Assembly (NCBI RefSeq): GCF_963921235.1
Contig: NC_086104.1
Location: 135,656,001 to 135,720,000, forward strand
DNA: 64,000 nt
From: Mobula hypostoma
Taxonomy: Eukaryota
Direction: 5' to 3'
Shown: positions 11,686 to 51,200 of the stretch, in pieces
Layout of the letters: each line of letters opens with the position of its first letter
Position numbering within the stretch: position 1 is the first letter of the stretch
The notes under the pieces: model-generated
What the model saw: only the letters and a program-made list of their open reading frames with translations
The model's database searches: none
What the model was told of the DNA's origin: nothing
Position numbers and translations under genes: made by a program

Positions 11686-13007
11686 TGGCATGGTCCGGTC
11701 CGCGAAATCCGTATTCCGGTTCACAGTCTGGTCCATCGATCGGTATTCCAGATATTACGGTTTTCCTTTGTTCTGTTGGGTGCCCTAACTGAGGCACATG
11801 ATTCTCGTCTAGGCAGACACATCAATACCTCCGGACACCATGGCTTTTCTGCTAGATTGTTCCTGTCAAAACCGCCCTGTTTGAATCCCTTCGCTGCCCT
11901 TTCCTCCTGTAGCCGTACCCCGCAACCAGTGTCTGAAACATTGTCATGCAACCAGTGTCTGAAGCTTTGCCCTACAACCAGTGTCTGAAGCCTTGCCCTG
12001 CAACCCTTGCCTGAAGACATGCCTGCAACCTTGCCTATTCTCACCGTCAAGTTCAACCACCGGAGAGAGACCGGAAACCTGCTGAATCAAGATAAGGAAC
12101 TGTCTATCGTTGAGTTGGAACTGTTTCTGCGTCCACGCTTTCGCTAGGTAGGTTTGGCCGTTTGCCGCTACCTTCTGTTGTGAACCGTCTCTCTGTGCTC
12201 TGTGTATTAGTCCCGACCCTACATCCTCGTCCCTAGCAGGGGTCCTGACTCTGTTCAAAGCCCCGACCCCAAGTCATGTTTACAAAGAGGGGTCCCGGCT
12301 CTGTGTTCCATGTTCTTGTCGCTCAAGACCAAGCCTCTGTGTTCTGTGTTCCTGTCTCAGTCGACCAAAGCTCTGCGTTCCTGTCTCCCTCGACGAAGAC
12401 TCTGTGTTCCTATCTCCATTGACCAAGGCTCTGCGTTCCTGTCTCCCTCGACCAAGGCTCTGCGTTCCTATTCCTCTCGACCAAGACAAGGCTTAGTGTT
12501 CTCGCCCAGCCCACGAGTACCTCGTCCTTCCCAGGAGAACCTCGAGGAACCCAAACCTCGCCATGACCACGCCACGAGGAACCCAAGCCTCGTCATGTCC
12601 TCGCCTCGCTGAACCCAAGCCTCGTCATGTCCTCGCCTCCAGGAACCCAAGCCCCGTCATGTCCTCGCCACGAAGAAACCAAGCGTCGGGGAACCCAAGC
12701 CATGCCCAGACATATAGCCACGTCATGTCCTCGCCTAGTTCCGGGGTTCGAGACCGAGTCAAGAGCCAGGTTCTGGGTCCTTGTCCAGTCTCCGGCTCGG
12801 AATCCAAGCCCAGGCTCCTAGTTCCCAATTCCTTGAACTGGTCCCGCTTTCCTAGCCAAGTCCTAGTCCAAGTCTGTGTTCCTATCTCAGCACCTCGACT
12901 GCAACCATTCACGTCCCTAACTCTAGTCTCTAGTCCTGTCCTGTTCCTAGTACTTCAGTGTTTGTGTCTTACATTTTGTTCCACCACCAGCGTCCCCCAC
13001 TATGACA
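11686..13007 (+). mobile_element. Solo LTR-like element with internal minisatellite arrays
   Basis: Termini TGGCA...TGACA; degenerate 5-bp TSD GAGAA/TAAAA; GC-rich with tandem CCAAGCCTCGTCATGTCCTCGCC and GGCTCTG(C/T)GTTCC units. Homologous to 16106-17630 in inverted orientation. The strand is arbitrary. Confidence 0.75.
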
Positions 13008-20434: not shown

Positions 20435-20749
20435 ATGAAAGTTGGTCCTTGAGACTGAACGATGGGGGAAGCCGCTGCGATGGCCAAGTGGACGTGTATG
20501 ATAATGGTACCTGGCATAGACTACATGATAAATTTTGGACCATTAGTGAAGCAAATGTTGTCTGCAGACAACTACATTGCGGCTCGGCGATATCTGCCTA
20601 CAACATCTCGAAGTATAGAGAGAATGAACGGCCCGTGTTGGTGACGGAAGTTCAATGTGAAGGAAACGAGTCGCACCTCCGAAACTGCAAGATTTCCGTG
20701 TCGAAACGGTCTTCCTCGGACACCACGGGCGTTGGTGTCCTGTGTTCAG
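20435..20749 (+). CDS. SRCR domain exon 3 (6-cysteine variant lacking C2 and C7)
   Basis: TAG acceptor ends 20434; GTGAAT donor at 20750; 315 nt, phase 1-1. Translates DESWSLRLNDGGSRCDGQVDVYDNGTWHRLHD...VVCRQLHCG...QCEGNESHLRNC...GVGVLCS. Confidence 0.94.
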
Positions 20750-23700
20750 GTGAATATTTTTAAAAGGTGGCAATGGAAATATTTAAAATGGCGTCGCGAT
20801 TAATACTAAATCGAGAAATGCAGATTTATTGAATCGTATAAATATATATTTGGCTGACTGGCCATGTGGTCAATGACAATCAACTCCGCTTTTGCAGGAT
20901 TTCCATTTTATGCTACACCTACACAACACTACACAGACACAAATCCATCTGGAGCACCGTCCCGCAGGCTCTACCATTTATTTGGATATCATAGGGAATT
21001 TACAATACACATCTTTGGGATGTTAATGAAAACCTAAATACAGATGAATGCCACATCCTTTGAGAAAGAAAATACAAAATTCGCACAGATTTGGCATTTA
21101 ATCTGCGTCACTGTATTTGTGAGTATCAGCTTCAGATGCTCTGTGCACGATTTTAGCACATCCAATCACCACTGGACTGTGTGCCCAATGAGTGTGCCCT
21201 GCAGTGCGACATAATGAGTGAAACTGGATTAATCCGTTATCATGGATGTAATCAGCTATTGCTACGAGATTTATCTGATCTATCGCAGAACTTTCAGGCA
21301 AGGTCTTATTATGTGATGTCGAAATGATAGGAAATTCACCTTGAAATTGAAAGCGGAAACAAAAGATTTGTTTGAGCACAGGAGGAATTCAAATATGTGA
21401 GCTTACAAAGTGGTGGTGAGAGGAGGAAGGTATTGTGAACATTATAGAACTGTTGATTATTCACTATTACGACTGCTGAAATATCAGTGGCAGGCGAATG
21501 CATGTTGGAGTTCGCTGGAATATGTCAAAATATGACAAATTTTCAATTCACTGAAGCATAATAAATCTCTGATGAGTTGCATATATCAGTGAGTCGGCCA
21601 AATTTCAGAATAATGCAGGGGAAATGTTGAGTGAAGGAGTTGCACAGCTGGAAGGGAAGGGAAAGAAAACTCAGGTATTGAAGTTAGACAAGAAAATAAA
21701 GCAAATACGTTTCAAAATCAGATGATACGAGTAAGGAGCAACAGAATGCGATGCTACTGAGGGACAGGGTTATTTGTGATCTGATACAAAATGGATCAGA
21801 TAATCAAATAATGGGGCAAATGCGATGCTAAGCGTTATCACAACTTATCCAATAATCCTTCCTGGATCTGCAGGCTAAGTACTTCAGTGAGTTTAGATTA
21901 TCTGTGTCCGTGTGCACTAATGTTTTCAAATGATCTTTTTGTAAATTTGTGCATCACTGTGTATCACAAGCAGTGTCGGAACGCATTCCCATTATCGTAT
22001 TAATCCTGAACCAAAATGAGTTGTTTGATACATTCTGAAGGTTTGTATGGACATCCAGTCTTGCTGTAGTGCTGGGAAATTCATTGCCGATTTGCATGCA
22101 AATGAAATTGTTGTTATTTTTTTTTAATATATAGTTGGGTGCGTATATATGTTGAATGCAAAAGTGTCTTTTAAGAGAATGTGAACTATGCCCAAATGTT
22201 AAAGTGACAGGGAAAATCAGCGGCAAATGTCTTGCCAAATGCCTAGTCTCACAACTACTTAAACTACTTGAGTGTGGGAGGTGCTGAAAGAACAAGCCGA
22301 AGTTAAATACAATTGGATACTAGCAACTTCATTTTAAGTCAGCAGCTGATGTCTGTCTGGTCTGTTCCGTCTGTCCAGGCTTCTTACTGAATGCAGCTGC
22401 CTTATTGATATTTCCCTTGCCTTCACATATAGTATGTTACCCCTTGAGGAATTAAAATGAAAACCGCCGATTGAGCAATGAAATTGAAAACAGCATTGAT
22501 ACACGACCGGAATGAAGACATGCTAAATAATTAATAGTTAATTTTGCTCCATTATCTGATAAAGACTATGAGAATAAGCCGGCAATTTATAGACCGTTCA
22601 GTCTGACATCAGTACTGTCTACATTATTGAAAGGTGCTCCAAGGGATCAGATATATAAATAATTGAATAGACTGGGCATGATTGAGTGGTCAACATCTCT
22701 GTCTGCGGGGCAGGTCTTGTGTAACCAATGTTATAGACTTTTTTTTTTCCCCACACGGTTACCCGGAAAGTTAATGAATGGAAAACAGCGAATGTTACAA
22801 TTTCCGTGAAAGGTGTATAATAAGCAGGGCAGATGAACTTAGAGTGTGGATCATCATGTGGAATTAGGATGTTGTGGACATGCAAGAGACGTGGATGGTC
22901 TAAGTGCAGAAATGACTGCTGAGTGTGCCAGGCTTTAGATATTTCAGAGAAAGTCAGGGAGGAAGCAAACGAGTTAGGGGAGAGGCACTGCTAATCAAGG
23001 ATAGTATCACGACTGCATAAAAGGATAAGTCATGGAAGGATGCCTATTAAGTCGTTGTGGGTGACAGACAGAAACAGGAAAGGGGTAATAACTCCACTGC
23101 ATGTTTCTTTTTTTATATATATAGAACCCCGCTCCAGTAGTAACAGAGATATTGAGGAGCAGATAGGGAGGTAGTTTATAGCATGGAGCAGTAATAATAG
23201 GGTTGTTACGAATGGTGATTTTAACTCTCCAATTATTAAATGGCATCTCCTGAGAACAAGGGGTTTTGACAGGGTGGAGTTTGTTGACCGTGTTCAGAAA
23301 GGTTTTCTGACGAAATATATGGATAGTCCAACTGGAGGAGAGGCTCTACCTGATCTGATAATGGTAAATGAACATGGTCAGGTGTCAGATCTCTCGGTAA
23401 AAGAGTTTTTTGGAGGTAATGATCAAAACTCGATTTCCTTTACCATTGCACTGGAGAAGGATAGGAATAGACAATTTGGATAAACATTTAATAGGGGTAG
23501 GAAGATCTATGATGTTTTTAAGCAGGAACTTGGTAAAATAAATTGGGAGGAGATGTTCTCAGGGAAATGCACGGAAGACATGTAACAAATGTTCAGCGAA
23601 CTCTTGCATGGCCTCTGTATAGGTATGTTCCATTGGGACATGGAAAGGATGATAGTGTTAACGAGCTATGGTCTATAAAGGATGTAGAAAATGTTGTTAA

Positions 23701-27100: not shown

Positions 27101-27685
27101 TTAGTCCTGGTTTGTATTGTGTTTTTTTGCGATAACATTCTGGGTGAATGTTGTATCTTTTTTTTAATACATGCATTTCTAAATGATAATAAACGAGGAC
27201 TGAGTGTCCACATAATCTAATCAAATCTAATCTAATTATGATTCCCGGAATGAAAGGTTTATCCATACGAGGAGCGTTTGATGGTTCTCTCTCTCTCTGT
27301 ACCCACTTGAATTCAGAAGGATAAGGGGGGAATCTCATTGAAGCCTTTCGAATGCTAAAAGGTCTAGACAGAGTAGATGTGGAAAGGATGTTTCCCATGG
27401 TGGGAGAGTCTAGGACGGGAGGGCACAGCTTGGAGATAAATTGGCGCTCTTTCGAAACAAAGATGCGGAGAAATTCCTTTAGCCAAAGGGTGCTGAATTT
27501 GTGGAATTTGTTCCCACATGGTGCTGTGAAGGCCAGGTCGTTTATTGTATTTAAGGCAGAGACTGATAGATTCTTGACTGGACATGGAATCAACGGCTGC
27601 GGGGAGAAGGCCAGGAACTGCAGTTGAGGAGCAGAAAAAAAGAAAAGATCAGCCAGGATTCTGCTCCTATGTCTTATGGTCTTAT
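24110..27685 (+). mobile_element. CR1 LINE (nested; EN plus RT) of a different subfamily
   Basis: LNAHSIRNKVEDL, YKSPGADELH, NYRPVSLTSVVGK, KFADDTKIGG; 3' tail TCTTATGGTCTTATG. Itself split at 26532-27235. Confidence 0.9.
26532..27235 (+). mobile_element. Non-autonomous ~700 bp retroposon (GAAGATGGCGGC head, (TCTAA)n tail), copy 1
   Basis: Interrupts CR1 between GTTCACG and ATGATTCCCGG; AATAAA followed by TCTAA repeats at the 3' end. Homologous to 37381 and 42613. Confidence 0.8.
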
Positions 27686-29193
27686 GCACCGAACCAGATA
27701 AAACCTAGGCTACTTTGTGCAGCAGTGACGGAGACTCTGGTGATGATCATTGCATCATCAATAGGGATCGGAGAAGAACCAGATGATTGGAAGGTTACAA
27801 ACGTTGTTCCCTTGTTCAATAAAGGTAGCAGAGATAACCGAGGAAATTATAGACCAGTGAGTCTATCTTCAGTGTGGGCAAGTTATCGGAGAATATCCTG
27901 AGAGGCAAGTTTACGAGCATTTGGAGAGAGATAATCTGATTAAGGATAGTCAGCGTGGCTTTATCAAGAACAGGTCATGTGTTACGAACAAGAGTAAATG
28001 TGGATGTAACAATACACATTGATGAAGGTAGAGCAATGAGTGTTGTGTATATGGATTTAGTAAGGCATTTGATAAGGTTCCCCATTAGAGACTCATTCAG
28101 ATTGTAATGCGACATGGGATCCAAGGGGATATTGCTTTGTGGAACAAGAAATGGCTTGTCCAGAGAGGGCAAGGGTGGTAGTAGATGGTTCGTTCTCTGC
28201 ATGGAGGACGGTGCCAGTGGTGTCACGCAGTAATCTATTCTGGGACCCCCTCCCCTTTGTGATTTGTATAAATGACTAATTTGAGAAAGTAGAAGGGTGG
28301 GTTAGTAGAATTGATGATGACACACAAGTTGGGAGTGTTGTGGATAGTCTGGAAGGTTGTCAGAGGTTACAGCGTGACATAGATAGGATGCATAACAGGG
28401 CTGAGAAATAAAAGATGGACTTCAACCCAGATAAGTGTGAAGTGTTTCATTTCGGTTGGTCAAATTTGAAGACAGAATATAGTACTAATGATAAGACTAT
28501 TGGCAGTGTGGAAGATTGGAGAGATCTTGGGGTCCGTGCCCATAGGACACTCAAAGCTGCGGCGCAGGTGGACAGTGTTGTTTAGACAGCCTATGGTGTG
28601 CTGCCTTCAGAAACCGTGGGATAGAGTTCAAAAGCCATGAGATAATGTTACAGATGTGTAAGAACTTAGAGTACTGTGTTCAGTTCTCGTCACCTTATTA
28701 CAGGAAGGATATGGATACTAAAGAGAGTGTGCAGCGGACATTTACAAGGATTTTGCCTGGATTGGAGAGCTTCCCTTATGAGAATAAAGTGAATGACGGA
28801 GCCTTTTCACCCTTGAATCGACGGAGGATTAGAGGTGACCTCAATGAGACGTATGAGATAATGAGAAGCTTTGATCATCTGCATAGCCACTGTCTTTTTT
28901 CCCAGGGCTGAAATGTCTACATGTGGGGTATAGTTTTACGGTGCTCGGAAGTAGGTAAAAAGGGGGTGTTAGAGGTAAATTATTCACACAGAAAGTGGTG
29001 GATGCGTGGAATGCACTGCCAGTGACGGTGGTAGAGGTGGATATAATAGGGTCCTTTAAGAAACTCTTAGAGAAATTCTGGGCTATGAGTTAAGAAATTC
29101 TTGGCAGTTTCTAGAGTCCGTTTTTGGTCGGCACAACATCGTGGGCCGAACAACTTTCAATGTGCTGTCAATTTCCATGCTTCCATGTGTCTA

Positions 29194-29468
29194 TTACACT
29201 CTTCTGTTTAATCTCCGAACAACTAGTTCTTCAATGTCCGACTTAGTCCAGGTTTCTGTGTCACCGATATTGCCATTGGAATAGGTCTGCATGACACAGG
29301 CGTCGGCATCGCCGGGCGGCCGTTTCTCTGCCTGCTCCTCCTTCTCGGACAGCCGGATGAAGTACCAGATAGCGAACTGGACCAGGTCTGCATGCCGATG
29401 CCGCAGCATCTCCACGCTGAAGGCTGCAACAGGTCGGTGAGTCCGGAGAGGGTCTCGATATTCATCAT
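29194..29468 (-). pseudogene. PRKAR2A: Processed pseudogene fragment of cAMP-dependent protein kinase type II regulatory subunit (D/D domain, linker and inhibitor site)
   Basis: Two minus-strand frames joined by a 1-nt frameshift near 29424 give MNIETLSGLTDLLQ/AFSVEMLRHRHADLVQFAIWYFIRLSEK...VMQTYSNG...SDIEELVVRRLNRRV*. This matches the RII N-terminus (MSIEIPxGLTELLQGYTVEVLR..P.DLVEFA..YFTRL) and the RFNRRVS autoinhibitory site. The region is a GC-rich island. RIIalpha versus RIIbeta is not certain. Confidence 0.85.
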
Positions 29469-29519
29469 AGCTCATTAGCCAGGATGGTGATCAGGTGATT
29501 AGAACGTTGATGAAATAAG

Positions 29520-30060
29520 ACATTTATGAGTAATGATTTGCAGTATTATGTCCATTTCTGGTCACCTGCTTACAGGAAATATATTAACAAGACTGTAAGA
29601 GTTCATGGAAAATTTACAATAATGTTTCCAGAACTTGAAGAGTTATAGGGAAAAGCTGAATATGTTAGAACTTCAGGATCTGGAACTCTGGACAATGGCA
29701 AGAGATTTTGCAAAAACAAACAAATTTATGAGGATTGTAGAATAGCCTTAATAAGCATAGGTTCCCACTGAAGTTGTGTGAGACTAAAACTATTTGCGAG
29801 AGATTAACGGTAAAACGGTGAAATATTTAAGCAGACTCGGAGGGGTATCTCCGCGGAAGGGACCAACACTGTCAAAAGAACTACCAATGGTGGATTGGGG
29901 TTCGATTTTAGCATTTAAGAAAAATTTGAATACATTTGTGGATGGAAGGAATATGGAAGGCAATAGACCGATTTCAAATAGATGTGACCTCAGAAAATAA
30001 TAGTCAGGCAATTATTAGATGGGCCGAAAAGAATCTTTCTATGTTGTGGATCTCCATGAG
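29520..30060 (+). mobile_element. Decayed CR1 3' fragment
   Basis: QYYVHFWSPAYRKYINK..RVHGKFT, AFKKNLNTFVDG. Confidence 0.65.
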
Positions 30061-30899
30061 CCTTTAACTCCATAATAGATCGGGGAGGGTGTGCAAATTG
30101 CGTCAGAACTGAAAACGTAGACTACATTGTTTCTCTGGGGAAAATGAGAAGACCTACATGAAAGTGCAGATGTGTACAATGCCCACTCTGTAAAGTTTGC
30201 TTATTTGAACTAGTGACTAAAAAGGGCTATAGTTTAAAATCTGTATTTCAATAACTTCTGAATAACAGTGGAATAAATCTGTACAATATCTCTTTTCCAG
30301 AGTAGTCCGATAACCATCTGTACTAACTGGCTGTACTGATTGAAATTTTCTTGGAGATGTGAAATGCCGTGACTTATTCAAACATAGAATATCCAGTGGG
30401 AATCAACTACGGTTATTGTAGCTTATGTTCACTGATAAGAATCATACATCAATGCACATGGCTCCAAGATTTGGGGCAGTGAACTATTGCTCGGCTGAGA
30501 TAAGTTATTCTATAATAAGGTAGTAATGCCTGGATTTCACTGATACAAAGGGGAAAGGGGTCAGTGTGATCAGATATATTTATCGAGAAGTACATAAATG
30601 TTACATATGGAGCTAAATAGATGTTTGAAATAAGGGTTAAAGGGAACAGGAACAGAAGAAGTCTTGCGGCTTGTATAGATTACCCATCATGGTGTTTTCT
30701 GGAGGAACAGTCTTGCGGTGATAGGTGGAATAATTTTACGCCTCTTTAATTGTACGTTGTGTTCTTAACAGATTTGTTTAATGATATCAGAATAGAGAAA
30801 ATGTGGTCATCTTAAATCAGTGCATTTTACATATATTTTACATAAATATGGAAGCTGATGGCAATTAAAGTAAAGGACTTACACTGAAAGGGACTTTGC

Positions 30900-33800
30900 T
30901 TGGTAGAATTTCCATGTATTCACTACAGGGAGGTAGTCACACCTAGGCTGTCAGAAGCAGGTCGTTGGGTGACAGTCACAGGAGAGAAAGCGAAGGTGAG
31001 AAGACAGGTGGTGCAGAGAACCCCTGTAGCTATTCCCCTGAATAATAAGTTTACCCTCCTGAATACTGCTGGCGGGGACGACCAACCAGGTGTGAGCCAC
31101 GGTGGCAGTGCCTCTGGCACTGAAACTGACACGGTGGTGCAGAAGCGTGGGATAGAGAAGAGCAGAACTGTTGTTACTGGAGACTCTACAGTCAGGGGAG
31201 CAAACAGGAGATTTTGTGGACGTGAGAAGGACACCCGCATGGTTTGTTGCCTCCCGGGTGCCAGGGTCCGGGATGTCTCTGACCGGGTGCATGACATCCT
31301 GGTACGAGAGGGAAAGCAACCAGAAGTCGTGGTACATGTTGGGACCAACGACATAGGCAGGAAGAAGGATGAGGTCCTGAAGTATGAATTTCGGGAACTA
31401 AGCAGAAGGCTGAAGAACAGGACCTCAAGGGTTGAGTTCTCAGGATTGCTGTCAGTGCTACGTGACAGTGATGGTAAGAATTGGAGGACATGGTAGTTGA
31501 ATGCGTGGCTGAGTAGTTGGTGCAGGGAGCAGGGTTTTGGATTTTGGATCATTGGGATCTGTTCTGGGGAAGGTGGGACCTCTACAGATTGGATGGGTTG
31601 CACCTGAACTCGAGGGGGAGCAATATCCTTGCAGGTCGGTTCGCTGGCATTGTTTGGGAGGGTTTAAACTAATTTGCAAGGAGGATTGGATCCGGAGCAA
31701 TAGAGCAGTGAAAGAAGTGCATGGAGTAAAGCCAAATCTAACATATAGAGAGGATTTGAGGAAAGAGAAGCAGAATAATCGGTATAAAGCAGTAAGGTAG
31801 AAGGGCTTAAATGTGTGCACCTCAATGCAAGAAGCATCAGGAACAAAGTTGATGAACTGAGAGCTTGGATACATACATGGAATTATGATGTAGTGGCTAT
31901 TACAGAGACTTGGCTGGCACCAGGGCAGGAATGGATTCTCAATATTCCCGGATTTCTGTGTTTTAAAAGGGATAGAGAGGGCGGAAAAGGGGGAGGAGGG
32001 TGGCATTACTGGTCAGGAATACTATTACAGCTACAGAAAGGGTGGGTAATGTAGTAGGATCCTCTTTTGAGTCAGTATGGGTGGACGTCAGGAACAGGAA
32101 GGGAGCAGTTACTCTACTGGGGGTATTCTATAGACCCCCTGGTAGCAGCAGAGATACAGAGGAGCAGATTGGGAGGCAGATTTCGAAAAGGTGCAAAAAT
32201 AACAGGGTTGTTTTCATGGGTGACTTTAACTTCCCTAATATTGATGGTAACTGATTAATTCCAAGGGTTTAGATGGGGCAGAGTTTGTTAAGTGTGTCCA
32301 GGACGGATTCCTCTCACAATATGTGGACAGGCCGACTAGGGGGAATGCCATACTGAATCTAGTAGAAGGTAATGAACCGGGTCAGGTGACAGATCTCTCA
32401 GTGGGTGAGCATCTGGGGGACAGTGACCACCACTCCCTGGCCTTTAGCATTATCATGGAAAAGGATAGAATCAGAGAGGACAGGAAAAAAAAATAATTGT
32501 GGAAGGGCAGATTTTGAGGCTATAAGGCTAGAACTTGCGGGTGTGAATTGGGATGATGTTTTTGCAGGAAAATGTACTATGGACATGTGGCCAATGTTTA
32601 CAGACCTCTTGCAGGTTGTTGGGGATAAACTTGTACCGCAGAGGAAGATAAAGAATGGTAGGGTGAAGGAACCATGGGTGACAAGTGAGGTGGAAAATCT
32701 AGTCAGTTGGAAGAAGGCAGCATACATGAGCTTTAGGCAGCAGGGATCAGATGGGTTTATTGAGGAATATAGGAAAGCAAGAAAGGAATTTAAGAAGGGG
32801 CTGAGAAGAGCAAGAAATGGGCATGTGAAGGCCCTGGCGAGTAGGGTAAAGGAAAAACTCAAGAAATTCTTCAATTATGTGAAGAATTAAAGGATGACAG
32901 GAGTGAAGGTAGGACCGATTAGAGATAAAGGTGGGAAGATGTGCCTGGAGGCTGTGGAAGTGAGCGAGGTCCTCAATGAATACTTCTCTTCGGTTTTCAC
33001 CATTGAGAGGGAACTTGATGATGGTGAGGACGATATGAGTCAGGTTGATGTTCTGGAGCATGTTGATATTAAGGGAGAGGAGGTGTTGGAGTTGTTAAAA
33101 TACACTAGGACGGATATATCCCCGGAGCCTGATGGAATATTCCCCATGCTGCTCCACTAATCGAGGGAAGAGATTGCTGAGCCTCTGGCTAGGATATTTA
33201 CGTCCTCGTTGTCTACGGGAATGCTACCGGAGGACTGGAGGGAGACGAATGTTGTCCTCTTGTTCAAAAAGGGTTGCAGGGATAGTCCGGGTAATTATAG
33301 ACCAGTGAGCCTTACATCTGTGGTTGGAAAGCTGTTGGAACAGATTCTTAGAGATAGGATCTCTGGGCACTTAGAGAATCATGGTCTGATCAGGGACAGT
33401 CCTCGCATTGCTTTGTGAAGAGCAGATCGTGTCTAACTAGCCTGATAGCGTTGTTTGAGGAGGTGACCAGGTATATAGATGAGGGTAGTGCAGTGAATGT
33501 GATCTATATGGATTTCAGTAAGGCATTTGACAAGGTTCCACACGGTAGGCTCATTCAGAAAGTCAGAAGGCATGGGATCCAGGGAAGTTTGGCCAGGAAG
33601 ATTCAGAATTGGCTTGCCTGCAGAAGGCAGAGGGTCGTGGTGGAGGGAGTACATTCAGATTGGAGGATTGTGACTAGTGGTGCCCCACAAGGATCTGTTC
33701 TGGGACCTCTACTCTTCGTGATTTTTATTAACGACCTGGATGTGCGGGTAGAAGGCTGGGTTGGGTTGGTGATGTTGTAGATAGTGTAGAGGATTGTCAA

Positions 33801-34590
33801 ATATTGCAGAGAGACATTGATAGCATGCAGAAGTAGGCTGAGAAGTGGCAGATGGAATTCAACCCGGAGAAGTGTGAGGTGGTACTCCAAGGCAGAGTAC
33901 AAAGTAAATGGCAGGATACTTGGTAGTGTGGAGGAGCAGAGGGATCTCGGGGTACATGTCCACAGATCCGTGAAAGTTGCCGCACAGGTGGATAGGGCAG
34001 TGAAGAAAGCTTATGGGGTGTTAGCTTTGATAAGTCGAAGTATTTAGTTTAAGAGTCGCGATTTAATGATGCAGCTCTCTAAAACTCCAGTTAGGCCACA
34101 CTTGGAGTACTGTGTCCAGTTCTGGTCTCCTCACTTTCAGAAGGATGTGGAAACACTGGAAAGGCAACAGAAGAGAATTACGAGGATGCTGCCTGGTTTA
34201 GAGAGTATGCATTATGATCAGAGATTAAGGGAGCTAGAGCTTTACTCTTTGGAGAGAAGGAGGATGAGAGGAGACATGATAGAGGTGTACAAGATAATAA
34301 GAGGAATAGATAGAGTGGATAGCCAGCGCCTCTTCCCCAGGGCACCACTGCTCAATACAAGAGGACATGGCTTTAAGGTAAGGAGTGGGAAGTTCAAGGG
34401 GGATATTAGAGGAAGGCATTTTACTCAGAGAGTGGTTGGTGCGTGGAATGCACTGCCTGAGTCAGTGGTGCAGGCAGATACACTCGTGAAGTTTAAGAGA
34501 CTACTAGACAGGTACATGGAGGAATTTAAGGTCGGGGCTTATATGGGAGGCAGGGTTTCAGGGTCGGCACAACATGTTCCATGTTCTATT
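30900..34590 (+). mobile_element. Near full-length CR1 LINE with ORF1 SGNH/GDSL esterase domain and disrupted ORF2 (APE endonuclease plus RT)
   Basis: ORF1: VVTGDSTVRG, CCLPGARVRDV, VVVHVGTNDI. ORF2: [61 protein letters not shown]. Several stops and frameshifts, and the FADD segment is deleted near 33760. Confidence 0.95.
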
Positions 34591-36100: not shown

Positions 36101-36417
36101 AATTCAATGTCCGCCTTTTTTCTGTTGGCTCCAAAGGTAGCCTGTGATTACCTGATTCAGATTTAAATCGGTGTCTAGGTTCCCGCCTCTGTGGAAAACT
36201 CCGAACCGCGCTCGATGACTACCAGATTCATCCAACCTTTTTGTTGTAGTTTTGCCTTTAAAACTGATACTTGCGTATCGGCAGCATTAAATATTCGGTG
36301 ATATCATTGTACAATTATTTTCAAAATATAATTTCTGAAAAAGTTGTAGATATGCGTACTAAGTGATTAAATCAATTTGCCATGGAAATAAGAATCTCAT
36401 ACATTTCTGTTCAACAG

Positions 36418-36735
36418 GCCACTTGCAATTAAGGTTGTCCGGAAGTGATGATGCATGTGCTGGAAGACTGGAGATCTATTACAACGGATCCTGGGGAACA
36501 GTTTGTGATGACTCCTGGGATCTGGTTGACGCTAATGTGGTCTGCAAGCAACTGGGTTGTGGATATGCTTTAGAGGAAAAAATAATTATTGATTGCTGTG
36601 GTCAAGGCACTGGACTAGTTTGGTTGAATGAAGTGAATTGTTCTGGTAATGAATCGCATCTCTGGGAATGTCCCTCAGCTCCATGGGGCCAACATGACTG
36701 CAACCATAAAAAAGATGTGACAGTTTCGTGTTCTG
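36418..36735 (+). CDS. SRCR domain exon 4
   Basis: CAG acceptor ends 36417; GTAAG donor at 36736; 318 nt, phase 1-1. Translates [35 protein letters not shown]...[14 protein letters not shown]. Confidence 0.96.
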
Positions 36736-37380
36736 GTAAGGCTACTTCCATTGTGCTCATTTTCTGCCGTGCGGTAAGGGAATTTTCAGTTTGAAGATGT
36801 GGGAAATAATTTACAGCACCCAGATGGAGCACTGGCAAAGGATTGTCTGTGTAATGTTTCCCACTGCATTTAGGTAATAAAACAATTAATATTTTGCGTC
36901 CAAGTACCTTCATGAGGGCTGCAAAAAGGAACGGACATACATTTTTGAGCAGCAAAGAAGACGAAGGGGTTGGTGCCTAGAACAATGGCAACCCACTGAT
37001 TGCGTGAAGACGTATAAATTAATATAGCAGTTCGAGTAACCAGATCAGATTATGCCATGTTCTTTTAACTGACGTGCTGCTTATGGTAAGATCGTGATGT
37101 ATAGACGTCCTTCCCTGTGATATGGATAAACATTGGGACAGCCAGAACAAACCAGATGGTTACGAGGAGAACGTACAAAATCCTCACAGATAGCGGCGGT
37201 ATTGATCACGGTCGGCTGGTTCTGAAACAGCGTTACGCTAATAGCTCCGGTACTGAACTGAAAAAAAAAATGAAGCAACAATAGGAAACAAACGATCAGG
37301 TCTTATACAGTTAGATGCCAACATGTAAATACCCAACTCTGGGCAATACGATGTTGAATCTCGTGCAAGAAATTAAAGAC

Positions 37381-38061
37381 GAGGAGAAGATGGCGGCGCA
37401 GCGGCAGCGAGCGCGAACTCTCCGGTGAATGTTATCTGTAATCTGTCAAGTAGGGGACCGTGCACAATTCTGAATTGATGGAGACGGACATGAGGTTACG
37501 GAGGTACATCTGGAAATCTTCTGAAATGCCTGCTTCGCAGACGCTGCTACTGTGTGGTAACCGGAATCTCCGGACCAGAAGCCCCCGAATCCTCGGCTTT
37601 GTTTGTTTCAGCGGCCGGGGTTAGGTCGAAGGCGTTCGGCAGAGGATGGCGCTCGGGAGGCTGTATCGAAGGAGCTGGTCGGAGGCTCGAAGTTTTCGGA
37701 CGGACGTACTCAGTGTCGGCCGTGGTCGGCTGCTTCCAAGGCTTCGGCAAGTTGACGGTGCCTGGAGGTTTATTGCAGGAAGTTTCTCTCATTTTGCCGC
37801 TTGCTATCGGGGACTCGGGAGTCGATCGAATCGGGGACTTCGAGATTTTTTTACAGTGCCTATGGTTTGTTCATTATCAAATTATGGTATTGCTTTGCAC
37901 TGCTGTAACTATATGTTATAATTATGTGGTTCTGTCAGTGTAGGTCTTTGGTTTGTCCTGTTTTCTGCGATAACACTCCGGAGAAATATTGTATCATTTC
38001 TTAATGCACGTACGCATTTCTAAATGACAATGAAAGAGGACTGAGTGTTCTCATAACCTAA
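37381..38061 (+). mobile_element. Same non-autonomous retroposon, copy 2
   Basis: Starts GAGGAGAAGATGGCGGCGC; shares the CTTCTGAAATGCCTG and GGCTCGAAGTTTTCGGAC blocks and the GAGGACTGAGTGT.C.CATAA 3' end. Confidence 0.8.
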
Positions 38062-48240: not shown

Positions 48241-51200
48241 ATGGTCATATAAATGTACAGCAGAGTATCAGCCGATCGGCCAGGCTAGTTCGTGCCGAAC
48301 CGTTTAAACTGTCTTTTCCCATCTATCTGCACCGAGCCATCTACCTCTATAACCGTACCAGCCACGTACACATCCAATCTTACCTTAAACGCTGAAATCC
48401 AGCACTTCCCAGACAGATCACCCCATGCTTTCAGGATCCTCTGAGTGAAGACTTTTCCCTTCATATTCGCCTTGTATATTTTACCTTCCACACTTAGCCC
48501 ATGCCCTCTAGTTGAAGTCCCAACCTATGTGGAAAGGCCTGCTTGCATTTACGCTCTCGATACCCCCATAATATTGTACAAGTCTATTAAAAGTCCACTC
48601 AATAATCCACATTCCAAGGAACAACGTTCTCACCTATCTATTTTTTTCCTTGCAACGCAGGGCCCGCGGTCCCGCCAATATCCTTGTAAATCTTCTCATA
48701 ACCCATTCAGTCTTATATACATATTTCCTGCAGTTTGATCACAACTGCACACAATGCTTCAATATAGGTCTCAAAGTCGTATGCTCCCTCTATTTATCTG
48801 CCCAGTACTGTACGCAATGCTTTGATTTATGACGGCCAATGTAGCAAAAACTATATTTCCGACCGTATCCACCGACGCCACTTTCAATGAATGTTGTACC
48901 TATATTCCCAGTTGTCTTTATTCTACAACAGTCTATTATGCTCCACCGTTCACTGTGTAAGATATGCCCTAGTTGTTCCTACCGAAGTTCAACACCTCGC
49001 ACGTCTGCATTTGAATTCATATAACCATATAAGAGTTACAGCAAGGAAACAGGCCACTTCGGCCCATCTAGTCCATGACGAACTCATACCCTCACCTAGT
49101 CCCACCGACCTGCACTAGGCTCACAACCCTCCATTCCTTTCTTGTCCATATAATTGTCCAATTTAACTTTAAACGTCAACATCGAACCTGCCTCAACCAC
49201 TTCTGCTGGAAGTTCGTTCCACACAGCTCCCACTTTCTGAGTAAAGAAGTTCCTCCTCATGTTACCACTAAACTTTTGTCATCTGACTTTCTCTCTCAAC
49301 TCATGTCCTCTTGTTTGAATCTCCCACACTCTCAATGGAAAAAAGCCGATTCACGTTAATTCTATCTATCCCCCTCATAATTTTAAATACCTCTAACAAG
49401 TCCCCCCTCAACCTTCTACGCTCCAAAGAATAAAGACCCAACTTGTTCAACCTTCTCTGTAACATAGATGATGAAACCCAGGTAACATTCTAGTAAATCT
49501 TCCCTGTACTCTCTCTAATTTGTTGACATTTTCCTATAATTCGGTGACGAAAACTGTACACAATACTCGAAATTTGGCCTCACCAATGCCTTGTACAATT
49601 TCAACAATACATCCCAACTCCCATACTCAATGCTCTGCTTTATAAAGGCCAGCATACCAAAAGCTTTCTTCACCACTCTATCCACATGAGATTCCACCTT
49701 CGGGGAACTATGCACCAATATTCCTTGATCCCTCTGTTCTACTGCACTGTTCAATGCCCTACCATTTACCATGTATGTCCTATTTTGTTCAGTCCTACCA
49801 AAATGTAGCACCTAATATTTATCAGCATTTAACTCCATCTGCCATCTTTCAGCCCACCCTTCTAACTGGCCTAAATCTCTCTGCAAGCTTTGAAAACCTA
49901 CTTTATTATCCACAACTCCACCTAACTTAGTATCATCTGCATACTTACTCATCCAATTTACCACCCCATCATCCACATCATTAATGTATATGCTAATTAA
50001 CAATGGACACAGTACAGATCCCGGAGACACACCACTAGTCACTGGCCTCAAATCTGACAAACAGTTATCCACCACCACTGTATAGCGTCTCCCATCCAGC
50101 CACGGCTGAATCCATTTTACTAGTTTAATATTAATACATAACGATTCAACCTTCCTAACTAACCTTCCATGTGGGACCTCGTCAAAGGCCTTACTGAAGT
50201 CCATAAAGACAATATCCACCGCTTTACCCTCGTCAACTTTCCTACCAACCTCTTCAAAAAATTCAATAAGATTTGTCAAACAAGACCTGCCACGTGCAAA
50301 TCCATGTTGACCGTTCCTAAAAAAGACCCTGTCTATCCAGATATTTATATATACCAACTCTAACAATACTTTCTATCAATTTACCGACCACTGACGTCAA
50401 ACGCACAGGCCGATAATTGCTAGATTTAGTCTTAGAACCCATTTTAAACAATGGAACAACATGACCAATATGCCAGTCCTCCGGCACTATCCCCGTTTCT
50501 AATGACATTTGAAATATTTCTGTCAGAGCCGCTGCTATTTCCACACTAACTTCCCTCAAGGTCCTAGGGAATATCCTGTCAGAACCCGGAGACTTATCCA
50601 CCTTTATATTCCTTAAAAGCTCCAGTACTTACTCTTCTTTAATTATCAGAGAATATCCTTCTCTTTAGTTAATATCGAAGAAAAGATATTGTTCAGAATC
50701 TCCCCCATCTCTTTTGGCTCCACACATACCGGTCCACTCTGATTCTCCAAGGCTCCAATTATATCCCTCACTATCCTTTTACAGTTAATATAACTGTAGA
50801 AAACCATGGGATTTATTTTCACCTTACTTGCCAAAGCAACCTTATAACTTCTTTTAGTTTTTTTTTTCTAATTTCTTTCTTAAGATTCATTTACATTCTT
50901 TGTATTCCTCGGGCACCTCATTTGAACCTCATTTGAACACTAATGCGCGCCAAGTTTCAGATATCCCTCGAAAAACATGGCTCCCTCAAACTTTGAACCT
51001 TTCCTTTCAACCTAACAGGAATGTAAAGATTCTGTACTCTCAAATTTTCATCTTTAAATGACCTCCATTTCTCTTTTACATTCTTCCCATAAAACAAATT
51101 GTCCCAGTCCATTCTTTCTAAATCCTTTCGCATCTCTTCAAAGATAGCCTTTCTCCGATCAAAAATATCAACCCTGGTTCCAGTCCTATCCTTCTCCATA

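What the first reader, a model, noticed from the sequence alone, without database searches (positions are those of the whole stretch)
29194..29505. Hidden antisense retrocopy of the PKA RII N-terminus (AKAP-docking D/D domain plus RRVS site)
A GC-rich island between two CR1 fragments encodes, across one frameshift, the RII dimerisation/docking domain, the linker and RRLNRRV*, with the phospho-acceptor Ser codon now TAA. In mammalian PRKAR2A the RRVS site lies on a small separate exon, so contiguity here implies an mRNA origin. Unusually, the 5' end of the mRNA is kept and the 3' part is missing, ending tail-to-tail with a CR1. Retrocopies are considered scarce in CR1-dominated genomes because CR1 needs its own 3' tail. 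Host-gene transcription would make intronic RNA antisense to the parent mRNA.
Basis: partly seen in the sequence, partly recalled or inferred. Interest (0 to 1): 0.7.

Follow-up and report, generated by a model that had tools for sequence, protein, structure and literature searches.

The report
Dead PKA-RII retrocopy fragment beside CR1
A roughly 280-base, intron-free and broken copy of the first two exons of the protein kinase A RII-alpha regulatory subunit gene lies backwards in a LINE-filled intron of a devil-ray SRCR gene; it is an ordinary dead retrocopy, and its only unusual feature is that it may have been copied in together with the neighbouring CR1 element.

Summary
The minus strand 29476-29196 encodes the start of a PKA RII subunit. 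It runs MNIETLSGLTDLLQ, then a 1-base deletion at 29424/25, then the rest of the docking/dimerisation domain, the linker and RRLNRRV followed by TAA.

The mRNA origin is shown. In RII-alpha genes an intron follows "DFE", and PPVVNRFNRRVS lies on a 36-base mini-exon (seen directly in a lizard locus, 19.5 kb downstream of exon 1). The window joins both exons with no intron. It matches spliced exon 2 at 23/33 bases, against 10/33 for an elasmobranch-type intron 1.

No exon 3 remnant was detected in the 64 kb, and two cNMP-motif patterns gave no hit. There is no poly(A) and no target-site duplication.

The TAA could be a mutated Ser codon or part of the CR1a tail; the junction is ambiguous over 29193-29200.

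The fragment sits exactly between a LINE tail and the 5'-truncated start of CR1b, head-to-head with CR1b. That is the geometry recently attributed to twin priming in antisense RNA/LINE-1 chimeras. I rate this at about 50%, inferred only.

Retrocopies are not scarce in cartilaginous fishes. No function is supported.

The scan earlier noted a comparable HMGB2 retrocopy head-to-head with a Penelope tail elsewhere in this genome; I did not check it.

The parts
29196..29228 (-). Exon-2-derived segment, 33 of the 36 bases of the RII-alpha mini-exon. It encodes (E)LVVRRLNRRV followed by TAA.
   Evidence: 23/33 identical to spliced exon 2 of L002, against 10/33 for intron 1 of L001. The mini-exon with its AG/GT borders was seen in lizard locus L005.
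29229..29465 (-). Exon-1 coding part: ATG, D/D domain and linker up to ..SDIE+G.
   Evidence: tblastn to P0002, P0004, P0009, P0016 and P0018. 71% DNA identity to L001 exon 1. Pfam RIIa and PDB RII hits.
29424..29425 (-). 1-base deletion (frameshift) between the first helix (..LTDLLQ) and the rest of the D/D domain.
   Evidence: Pairwise alignment with L001 and three-frame translation.
29195..29197 (-). TAA at the position of the phospho-acceptor Ser codon. It overlaps the last unit of the CR1a tail, so its origin is ambiguous.
   Evidence: Aligns to TCA in L002. 29189-29196 also fits the 8-base tail unit of CR1 copies.
29466..29476 (-). Short remnant of the 5' UTR.
   Evidence: The BLASTN alignment with L001 starts 11 bases upstream of the ATG.
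29477..29513 (.). Unassigned 37 bases between the RII homology and the CR1b homology: more 5' UTR, CR1b or filler.
   Evidence: No match to the L001/L003 upstream sequence. CR1 protein homology starts at 29514.
29194..29475 (-). 93-aa ORF that starts out of frame and joins the RII frame only through the frameshift. It is not a plausible protein.
   Evidence: No homologue found for it as such.
27690..29196 (+). CR1a, a 5'-truncated CR1 LINE. Its microsatellite tail abuts the 3' end of the RII fragment (tail-to-tail).
   Evidence: blastn and tblastn to other CR1 copies in the window. Tail alignment. High-copy family in related species.
29514..30080 (+). CR1b, a 5'-truncated CR1 LINE, head-to-head with the RII fragment.
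   Evidence: tblastn: KTFMSNDLQYYVHFWSPAYRKYINK... is 51% identical to CR1 ORF2. 3' UTR and tail alignment.
27328..27687 (+). LINE X, the 3' part of another CR1-like element. Its tail directly precedes the 5' end of CR1a, giving a nested array of insertions into tails.
   Evidence: tblastn and sequence.

Best explanation
**What it is.** This is a non-functional processed pseudogene fragment. It is a cDNA copy of the 5' end of the ray's prkar2a-type (PKA RII-alpha) mRNA, made of about 11 or more bases of 5' UTR, exon 1 and nearly all of the 36-base exon 2.

**Where it sits.** It lies antisense in the 15.6-kb LINE-filled intron between SRCR exons at 20449-20763 and 36363-36794.

**Why it is dead.** It carries a frameshift, has lost invariant D/D residues and stops at the RRVS serine position. 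No exon 3 or cNMP-domain remnant was detected in the window.

**Most likely origin (about 50%, inferred).** It was never longer, and it arrived in the same event as CR1b by twin priming:
1. CR1b integrated by target-primed reverse transcription into the microsatellite tail of an older LINE.
2. The free top-strand 3' end, which ends in tail sequence ...TCTATTACAC, annealed by 3-6 bases of microhomology to the prkar2a mRNA at GUGU(C/A)A near the end of exon 2.
3. That end was extended towards the mRNA 5' end.
4. The two cDNAs were joined head-to-head.

This accounts for the antisense orientation, the retained 5' end, the missing 3' end and poly(A), and the exact fit between a LINE tail and a truncated LINE start.

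**Shown:** mRNA origin, decay and anatomy. **Inferred:** that it was a single event, and which enzyme made it.
For: **mRNA origin**
- Exon 1 and exon 2 are contiguous.
- Intron 1 (phase 1, after DFE) is present in many genomic ORFs that read C|GTAAG or C|GTGAG.
- It is present in the elasmobranch-type contig L001 as G|GTAAAC.
- It is present in lizard locus L005, where exon 2 lies 19.5 kb downstream of exon 1.

**Decay**
- 1-base deletion at 29424/25.
- Invariant residues changed: P to L, T to S, V to M and P to H, judged against alignment A2.
- No remnant of exon 3 or of the start of the first cNMP domain, and no hit to two cNMP motif patterns.

**Anatomy**
- The LINE X tail is followed directly by CR1a. 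The CR1a tail is followed by antisense RII, then by the 5'-truncated CR1b.
- The CAC/ACAC overlap at the junction also occurs at the end of the LINE X tail.

**Persistence.** Contigs of another species bridge both junctions (organism E, 29126-29565), and one of organism B spans the CR1a junction and all of the RII homology (29125-29499). The composite is therefore old and inherited as a unit.

**Precedent.** PMC13174262 proposes twin priming for antisense 5S, tRNA-half, U5 and some mRNA segments joined to LINE-1. For 5S rRNA it states that the RNA's 5' start lies at the LINE junction and that the RNA is 3'-truncated.
Against: - No target-site duplication could be found. CR1 insertions often lack one, and the locus is old.
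- No species with an empty site was seen, so a single event is not demonstrated.
- The fragment ends 1-4 bases before the exon 2/3 boundary. Twin priming leaves that as a coincidence of roughly 3-4%.
- The ray's own prkar2a locus was not available, so the true parent sequence, the 5' UTR length and the age are unknown.
- The search for a remainder used only exon 3, the N-terminal 218 aa of an RII and simple cNMP motifs, not a full-length vertebrate RII.
Confidence: 0.5

Rival explanations
1. An ordinary retrocopy of prkar2a, made by any reverse transcriptase and originally longer, was later cut down by independent LINE insertions (CR1a or X at the 3' side, CR1b in the 5' UTR) and by deletion of the remainder.
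For: - The intron is packed with CR1 fragments, so adjacency to LINE ends is not rare.
- Retrocopies are fairly common in cartilaginous fishes.
- CR1a belongs to a much higher-copy family than CR1b and could be a later insertion.
Against: - No remainder is visible: no exon 3 or cNMP remnant, and no 5' UTR beyond CR1b.
- The sequence left of CR1a's 5' end is another LINE tail, not RII.
- This reading therefore needs several exactly placed insertions plus a deletion.
- There is no poly(A).
Confidence: 0.33
2. It is a retrocopy of a short aberrant transcript or RNA fragment that really ended at exon 2. Candidates are exons 1-2 spliced to an antisense CR1 in parental intron 2, or a free 5'-exon splicing intermediate used as template.
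For: RII homology stops 1-4 bases before the exon 2/3 boundary. In LINE-1 chimeras the RNA breakpoints often match processed RNA ends.
Against: - The splice variant needs the cryptic acceptor to sit exactly at the terminus of a CR1 tail, which is a second coincidence.
- The last 3-4 bases do not match the exon 2 end (TAAT against TCAG).
- No poly(T) tract on the + strand marks the end of such a transcript.
- Not testable without the parental intron 2.
Confidence: 0.07
3. It is a DNA-level copy of exon 1, or a live first exon of a prkar2 gene on the minus strand.
For: It is GC- and CpG-rich like a first exon, and the start codon and a little 5' UTR are present.
Against: - Exon 2 sequence follows exon 1 directly where the intron should start. 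There is no GT donor, and the match is 10/33 to the intron against 23/33 to exon 2.
- There is a frameshift in the D/D domain.
- No further RII exons were detected in 29 kb downstream on that strand.
- No promoter or UTR homology.
Confidence: 0.02
4. The fragment has acquired a function, either as a small D/D-like peptide from the 93-aa ORF or as an intronic antisense RNA that regulates prkar2a.
For: - A 93-codon ORF is open.
- Host-gene pre-mRNA would contain the antisense strand.
- The stretch is present in four related species.
Against: - The ORF starts out of frame and lacks the first helix of the D/D domain.
- Invariant residues are lost.
- No protein homologue exists.
- Only 71% identity and at most 14 exact bases to the nearest exon 1.
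- Presence in relatives is matched by the neutral flanks.
Confidence: 0.03

Closest known systems
Vertebrate processed pseudogenes (retrocopies)
   Same: An intron-less copy of a multi-exon gene's mRNA at an unrelated locus, decaying by frameshift and substitutions.
   Different: Only the first ~280 bases of the mRNA are present. It has no poly(A) and no detectable target-site duplication. Classical retrocopies keep the 3' end and lose the 5' end.
Antisense RNA/LINE-1 chimeric insertions attributed to twin priming (Cell Genomics 2026, PMC13174262; Ostertag and Kazazian 2001 as cited there)
   Same: A foreign RNA segment lies antisense to a 5'-truncated LINE. Its 5' start is at the LINE junction (stated there for 5S rRNA) and its 3' part is missing.
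   Different: - The LINE here is a CR1 in a ray, not a mammalian L1.
- The captured RNA is an mRNA 5' end that includes the first exon. The paper says its antisense mRNA cases did not include a first exon.
- TSD and endonuclease-motif evidence is lacking here.
Tailless retropseudogenes (Noll et al. 2015, PMC5322556)
   Same: A 3'-truncated retro-copied RNA without an A-tail, explained by internal priming through complementarity to the integration site.
   Different: Those are standalone, TSD-flanked and tied to relaxed L1 activity. None was found in chicken or platypus. This one is joined to a CR1 and has no visible TSD.
PKA RII-alpha N-terminus (D/D AKAP-docking domain, linker, RRVS inhibitor site)
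   Same: Colinear sequence: MNIE..GLTDLLQ / ..VE.LRHR..DLV.FA..YF.RL / ..MQT.SNG.. / ..R.NRRV.
   Different: It is frameshifted, several invariant residues are replaced, the serine is missing, and no cAMP-binding domains were detected. It is not a functional RII.

Membership tests
Processed pseudogene / retrocopy | Homology to the mRNA of a multi-exon parent gene | tested here: met
   RII-alpha-type matches in protein and DNA.
Processed pseudogene / retrocopy | An intron is absent at a position where the parent family has one | tested here: met
   Intron 1 is shown in L001 and L005 and inferred from more than 10 genomic ORFs. The window joins exon 1 to exon 2. The ray's own parent gene was not examined.
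Processed pseudogene / retrocopy | 3' poly(A) tract | tested here: not met
   The copy ends at the RRV codons against a CR1 tail, and there is no A-run.
Processed pseudogene / retrocopy | Flanking target-site duplication | tested here: inconclusive
   No shared word of 7 or more bases between the left flank and the sequence after CR1b. The locus is old, and CR1 often leaves none.
Processed pseudogene / retrocopy | Located away from the parent gene | tested here: met
   It lies inside an intron of a + strand multi-SRCR gene, and no other RII exon was detected in 64 kb.
Functional PKA RII subunit | Intact RIIa D/D domain | tested here: not met
   Frameshift at 29424/25. Pfam score is 22.3, below the 22.4 cut-off. 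Invariant P, T, V and P residues are replaced.
Functional PKA RII subunit | RRxS inhibitor/autophosphorylation site | tested here: not met
   RRV is followed by TAA, with no serine.
Functional PKA RII subunit | Two cNMP-binding domains | tested here: not met
   No tblastn or motif hit in the window. The probes were limited to exon 3, the start of the first cNMP domain and two motif patterns.
Twin-priming RNA/LINE chimera | A non-LINE RNA segment antisense to a 5'-truncated LINE, head-to-head, with the RNA 3'-truncated | tested here: met
   RII (-) 29476-29196 lies next to CR1b (+) starting at 29514. The geometry matches that described in PMC13174262.
Twin-priming RNA/LINE chimera | One TSD pair and an endonuclease site flanking the whole composite | tested here: inconclusive
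   None was found.
Twin-priming RNA/LINE chimera | Both parts absent together at an empty orthologous site | not testable with these tools
   All four related species laid hold the stretch. Listed contigs bridge both junctions in organism E and the CR1a junction plus all of the RII homology in organism B. No empty site was seen.

The most novel reading that the evidence does not exclude
CR1 reverse transcription in cartilaginous fishes can copy the 5' ends of host mRNAs by heterologous twin priming at LINE microsatellite tails. This would be a route to 5'-anchored, tailless retrocopies that bypasses CR1's need for its own 3' tail. In the strongest version the template was an RNA piece that truly ended at exon 2, such as a 5'-exon splicing intermediate. 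The HMGB2/Penelope head-to-head case noted elsewhere in this genome would be a second instance of such antisense capture.
Probability: 0.3. Interest if true: 0.45.

Novelty: new member of a known kind. Interest (0 to 1): 0.24.

Why it matters
In itself this is one more dead retrocopy fragment and has no bearing on PKA signalling or on the host SRCR gene.

Its value is as a clean worked example in two respects:
- A conserved 36-base mini-exon lets 33 bases prove an mRNA origin.
- The anatomy (antisense, 5'-anchored, tailless, wedged between a LINE tail and a truncated CR1) matches what has just been proposed for LINE-1 twin-priming chimeras in mammals.

If a census showed many such cases, it would show how genomes dominated by 'stringent' LINEs such as CR1 still produce retrocopies.

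Tried and rejected
**Searches that gave little**
- Whole-library phmmer with the 93-aa ORF gave 3 hits. The top one, P0001, is a spurious tandem-repeat protein.
- The word-indexed search with the window ORF found nothing.
- The search with P0003, meant to reach full-length RII proteins, returned only two close relatives. No full-length vertebrate RII was therefore available for an exhaustive tblastn.
- No catshark DNA could be fetched for P0002 because the file was too large.

**Tests on the window that were negative**
- A TSD search found none.
- A search for parental 5' UTR or intron sequence elsewhere in the window found none.
- CpG richness as a sign of an unmethylated island was rejected: the fragment is only in the top 14% of windows.

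**Assignments left tentative**
- Alpha versus beta by PDB scores is nearly tied (5.6e-30 against 8.5e-29). The alpha call rests on RRV and on source names.

**Limits of the read laying**
- At 80% likeness it was swamped by CR1 copies and gave no empty site.

**Earlier notes.** The scan's findings index, searched by sequence, was blank.

Full report
**1. Observation**

On the minus strand, 29465-29424 reads MNIETLSGLTDLLQ. One frame over, the 93-aa ORF 29475-29197 reads ..AAFSVEMLRHRHADLVQFAIWYFIRLSEKEEQ..VMQTYSNGN..SDIEELVVRRLNRRV followed by TAA.

The search evidence is consistent:
- Pfam finds the RIIa docking/dimerisation domain at E=1e-4. The score of 22.3 bits is a hair under the 22.4 cut-off, because the first helix is in another frame.
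- The PDB search returns only PKA RII-beta and RII-alpha chains at the top.
- tblastn with the catshark protein P0002 (scyTo_0014994) covers 29430-29227 at E=1.5e-12. The first 14 residues match 11/14.
- Linker motifs that are poorly conserved between paralogues are shared with P0002 and the Logan protein P0004: KEKEEQ, DADA, MQT.SNG and TET.

The start MNIE..TDLLQ is shared with the catshark protein and P0004, whereas the tetrapod and paddlefish hits begin MSIE..TELLQ (two unnamed Logan proteins have MSIE..TDLLQ). The fragment therefore comes from the chondrichthyan orthologue of this gene.

**2. Parent type**

- The named relatives are 'type II-alpha regulatory subunit' (Varanus) and 'KAP2' (paddlefish).
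- The inhibitor site reads RRV as in RII-alpha; the RII-beta chains read RRAS.
- PDB scores for a spliced relative barely separate alpha from beta: 5.6e-30 against 8.5e-29.

I call the parent prkar2a-type, tentatively.

**3. mRNA origin**

Many genomic ORFs from birds, lizards and paddlefish run ...SDSDFE and then RK, RE or RH. These read-throughs spell C|GTAAG or C|GTGAG, which is a phase-1 donor straight after DFE.

- The elasmobranch-type genomic contig L001 shows ...GACTTCGAAG|GTAAAC.
- The spliced RNA-derived contig L002 continues ...GACTTCGAGC|CTCCAGTTGTTAACCGATACAACAGAAGAGTATCAG|TTTGTGCTGAA (PPVVNRYNRRVS|VCAE).
- In the lizard locus L005, exon 1 is followed 19.5 kb later by ...TCATTACAG|CTCCTGTTGTCAACAGATTCAATAGAAGAGTATCAG|GTAAGA. 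This is a 36-base mini-exon with canonical borders.

The window reads GACATTGAAG-AACTAGTTGTTCGGAGATTAAACAGAAGAGTGT with no intron. These 33 bases match spliced exon 2 at 23/33, against 10/33 for intron 1 of L001. The binomial tail is about 3e-6.

The one caveat is that the ray's own prkar2a could not be fetched.

**4. State of the copy**

- There is a 1-base deletion at 29424/25.
- Residues invariant in alignment A2 are replaced: EIPPGL became ETLSGL, YTVEV became FSVEM, and HRP.DL became HRHADL.
- The serine position is a stop.
- No exon 3 remnant, no remnant of the start of the first cNMP domain, and no hit to two cNMP motif patterns were found anywhere in 64 kb. The probes were limited, because no full-length vertebrate RII could be obtained.
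- The exon-1 part is 71% identical to L001. This is a cross-species figure, so the age is unknown.
- CpG o/e is 0.87 against 0.575 for the window, which is unremarkable.

**5. The two ends**

*Left end.* CR1a (+ strand, about 27690-29196) ends in 8-base tail units, TTCCATGC TTCCATGT GTCTATTA, like other CR1 copies in the window.
- The TAA (29197-29195) and the following TAG ACA CAT GG are the reverse complement of that tail.
- TAA also aligns with TCA, the Ser codon, of L002.
- The tail of the LINE to the left (X) also ends ..TATGCAC.
- The junction is therefore ambiguous over 29193-29200, with a 3-6-base overlap.
- RII homology stops 1-4 bases short of the exon 2/3 boundary.

*Right end.* Only about 11 bases of 5' UTR align to L001. 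The next 37 bases are unassigned. CR1b (+ strand) begins at 29514 with KTFMSNDLQYYVHFWSPAYRKYINK, which is 51% identical to CR1 ORF2.

*Overall layout.* The X tail at 27687 is followed directly by the truncated start of CR1a. The region is thus an array of LINEs inserted into LINE tails. The RII piece is the only foreign sequence in it, and it sits exactly at the 5' junction of CR1b, in the inverse orientation.

**6. Mechanism**

On the top strand the RII sequence is cDNA-sense. It runs from a point near the end of exon 2 (left) to the mRNA 5' end (right), and then meets the 5'-truncated CR1b head-to-head.

This is the geometry of twin priming. During CR1b integration, the second nick's 3' end would prime on another RNA by microhomology and be extended to that RNA's 5' end. 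The second nick's end here is LINE-tail sequence.

A 2026 study of LINE-1 chimeras proposes exactly this for antisense 5S rRNA, tRNA halves, U5 and some mRNAs. For 5S rRNA it notes that the RNA's start lies at the LINE junction and that the RNA is 3'-truncated (PMC13174262). Tailless retropseudogenes are a related L1 phenomenon (PMC5322556).

I rate the single-event reading at about 50%.

*Main rival, about 33%.* An ordinary retrocopy was later cut down by insertions. This needs several exactly placed insertions and a deletion, and it leaves no remnant.

*Second rival, about 7%.* The template truly ended at exon 2. This explains the exon-boundary coincidence, which by my own rough estimate is about 3-4% by chance. 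The splice version, however, needs an acceptor exactly at a CR1 terminus.

No TSD was found, and no empty site was seen.

**7. Related species**

Contigs of four other species (organisms B-E) were laid on 27200-31200.
- All four cover the RII stretch at low depth, like the non-repeat flank 30150-30800. CR1a parts reach depths 1,000 to 10,000 times higher. The RII piece is therefore not a repeat family.
- Contigs bridge 29126-29565 (organism E, two different contigs) and 29125-29499 (organism B) at about 83-85% identity with 0-2 gaps.
- Between 2 and 8 distinct contigs cover single positions, both in RII and in the unique flank.

This is an inference from contig counts, not a demonstration.

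**8. Context claims**

- Retrocopy scarcity applies to birds. A 2026 preprint reports 14,081 retrocopies (5.4% of loci) in cartilaginous fishes, mostly species-specific (10.64898/2026.06.26.734816).
- Antisense regulation of prkar2a by intronic RNA has no support: 71% identity, with a longest exact run of 14 bases, to the nearest available exon 1.
- Expression could not be tested.

**9. Earlier notes of this scan**

- The host gene and taxon (a WC1/SCART-like SRCR gene of a cartilaginous fish; devil ray) come from notes s1-142274 and s1-223189.
- I confirmed only the SRCR exons on the + strand.
- Note s1-223189 describes an HMGB2 retrocopy head-to-head with a Penelope tail elsewhere in this genome. 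Note s1-143829 describes a 28S fragment joined to a truncated CR1.
- These are unchecked leads that chimeric retro-insertions recur here.

**10. Verdict**

The observation and the core reading (a hidden antisense retrocopy of the RII N-terminus) are right. It is a dead fragment of a known kind. The only point of interest is the likely CR1-linked twin-priming origin, which remains inferred.

Noticed in passing
window 27328-30080: Three + strand, 5'-truncated CR1-like LINEs lie in series: X, CR1a and CR1b. X's microsatellite tail is followed directly by CR1a's truncated start, and CR1b follows CR1a's tail after the RII piece. This pattern points to repeated insertion into existing LINE tails.
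   Followed up: partly
window 29125-30820, as seen in runs X5, X9, X10 and X11: Two to eight distinct contigs per position, with the listed ones about 83-85% identical to the window, cover both the RII piece and the non-repeat flank in four related species. This suggests paralogous copies of this intron segment, possibly in paralogous SRCR genes.
   Followed up: partly
P0003 (and P0027, P0028): A protein named 'cAMP-dependent protein kinase regulator' by JGI carries two tandem RIIa docking domains (MSLELPDGLTDLLQ... then EIPEGLSDLLQ...) before the inhibitor site. That is a duplicated D/D domain.
   Followed up: no
P0002 (catshark scyTo_0014994), P0018 (Lerista lerEdw1_015477; locus L005 10001-33481): Public gene models of RII-alpha are truncated or wrong after exon 1 or exon 2. 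The 36-base mini-exon is skipped in the catshark model and read through into the intron in the lizard model.
   Followed up: partly
P0001: The best whole-library hit of the 93-aa ORF is a 718-aa protein made of 13 copies of a 53-residue unit containing AFSVEML. It is a chance word match, not an RII relative.
   Followed up: no
L001 1-70: The start of the elasmobranch-type prkar2a contig matches the LEYCVQF region of CR1 copies in this window at about 70% (for example 49561-49630 and 34040-34112). Related CR1 families therefore flank the parent-type gene.
   Followed up: no
window 37350-37900 and 12350-12850: These are the most CpG-dense stretches of the window: up to 29 CpG per 300 bases with o/e about 1.2 at 37551, and GC 0.6 at about 12500. 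They lie in the SRCR gene's introns. Their nature was not examined.
   Followed up: no
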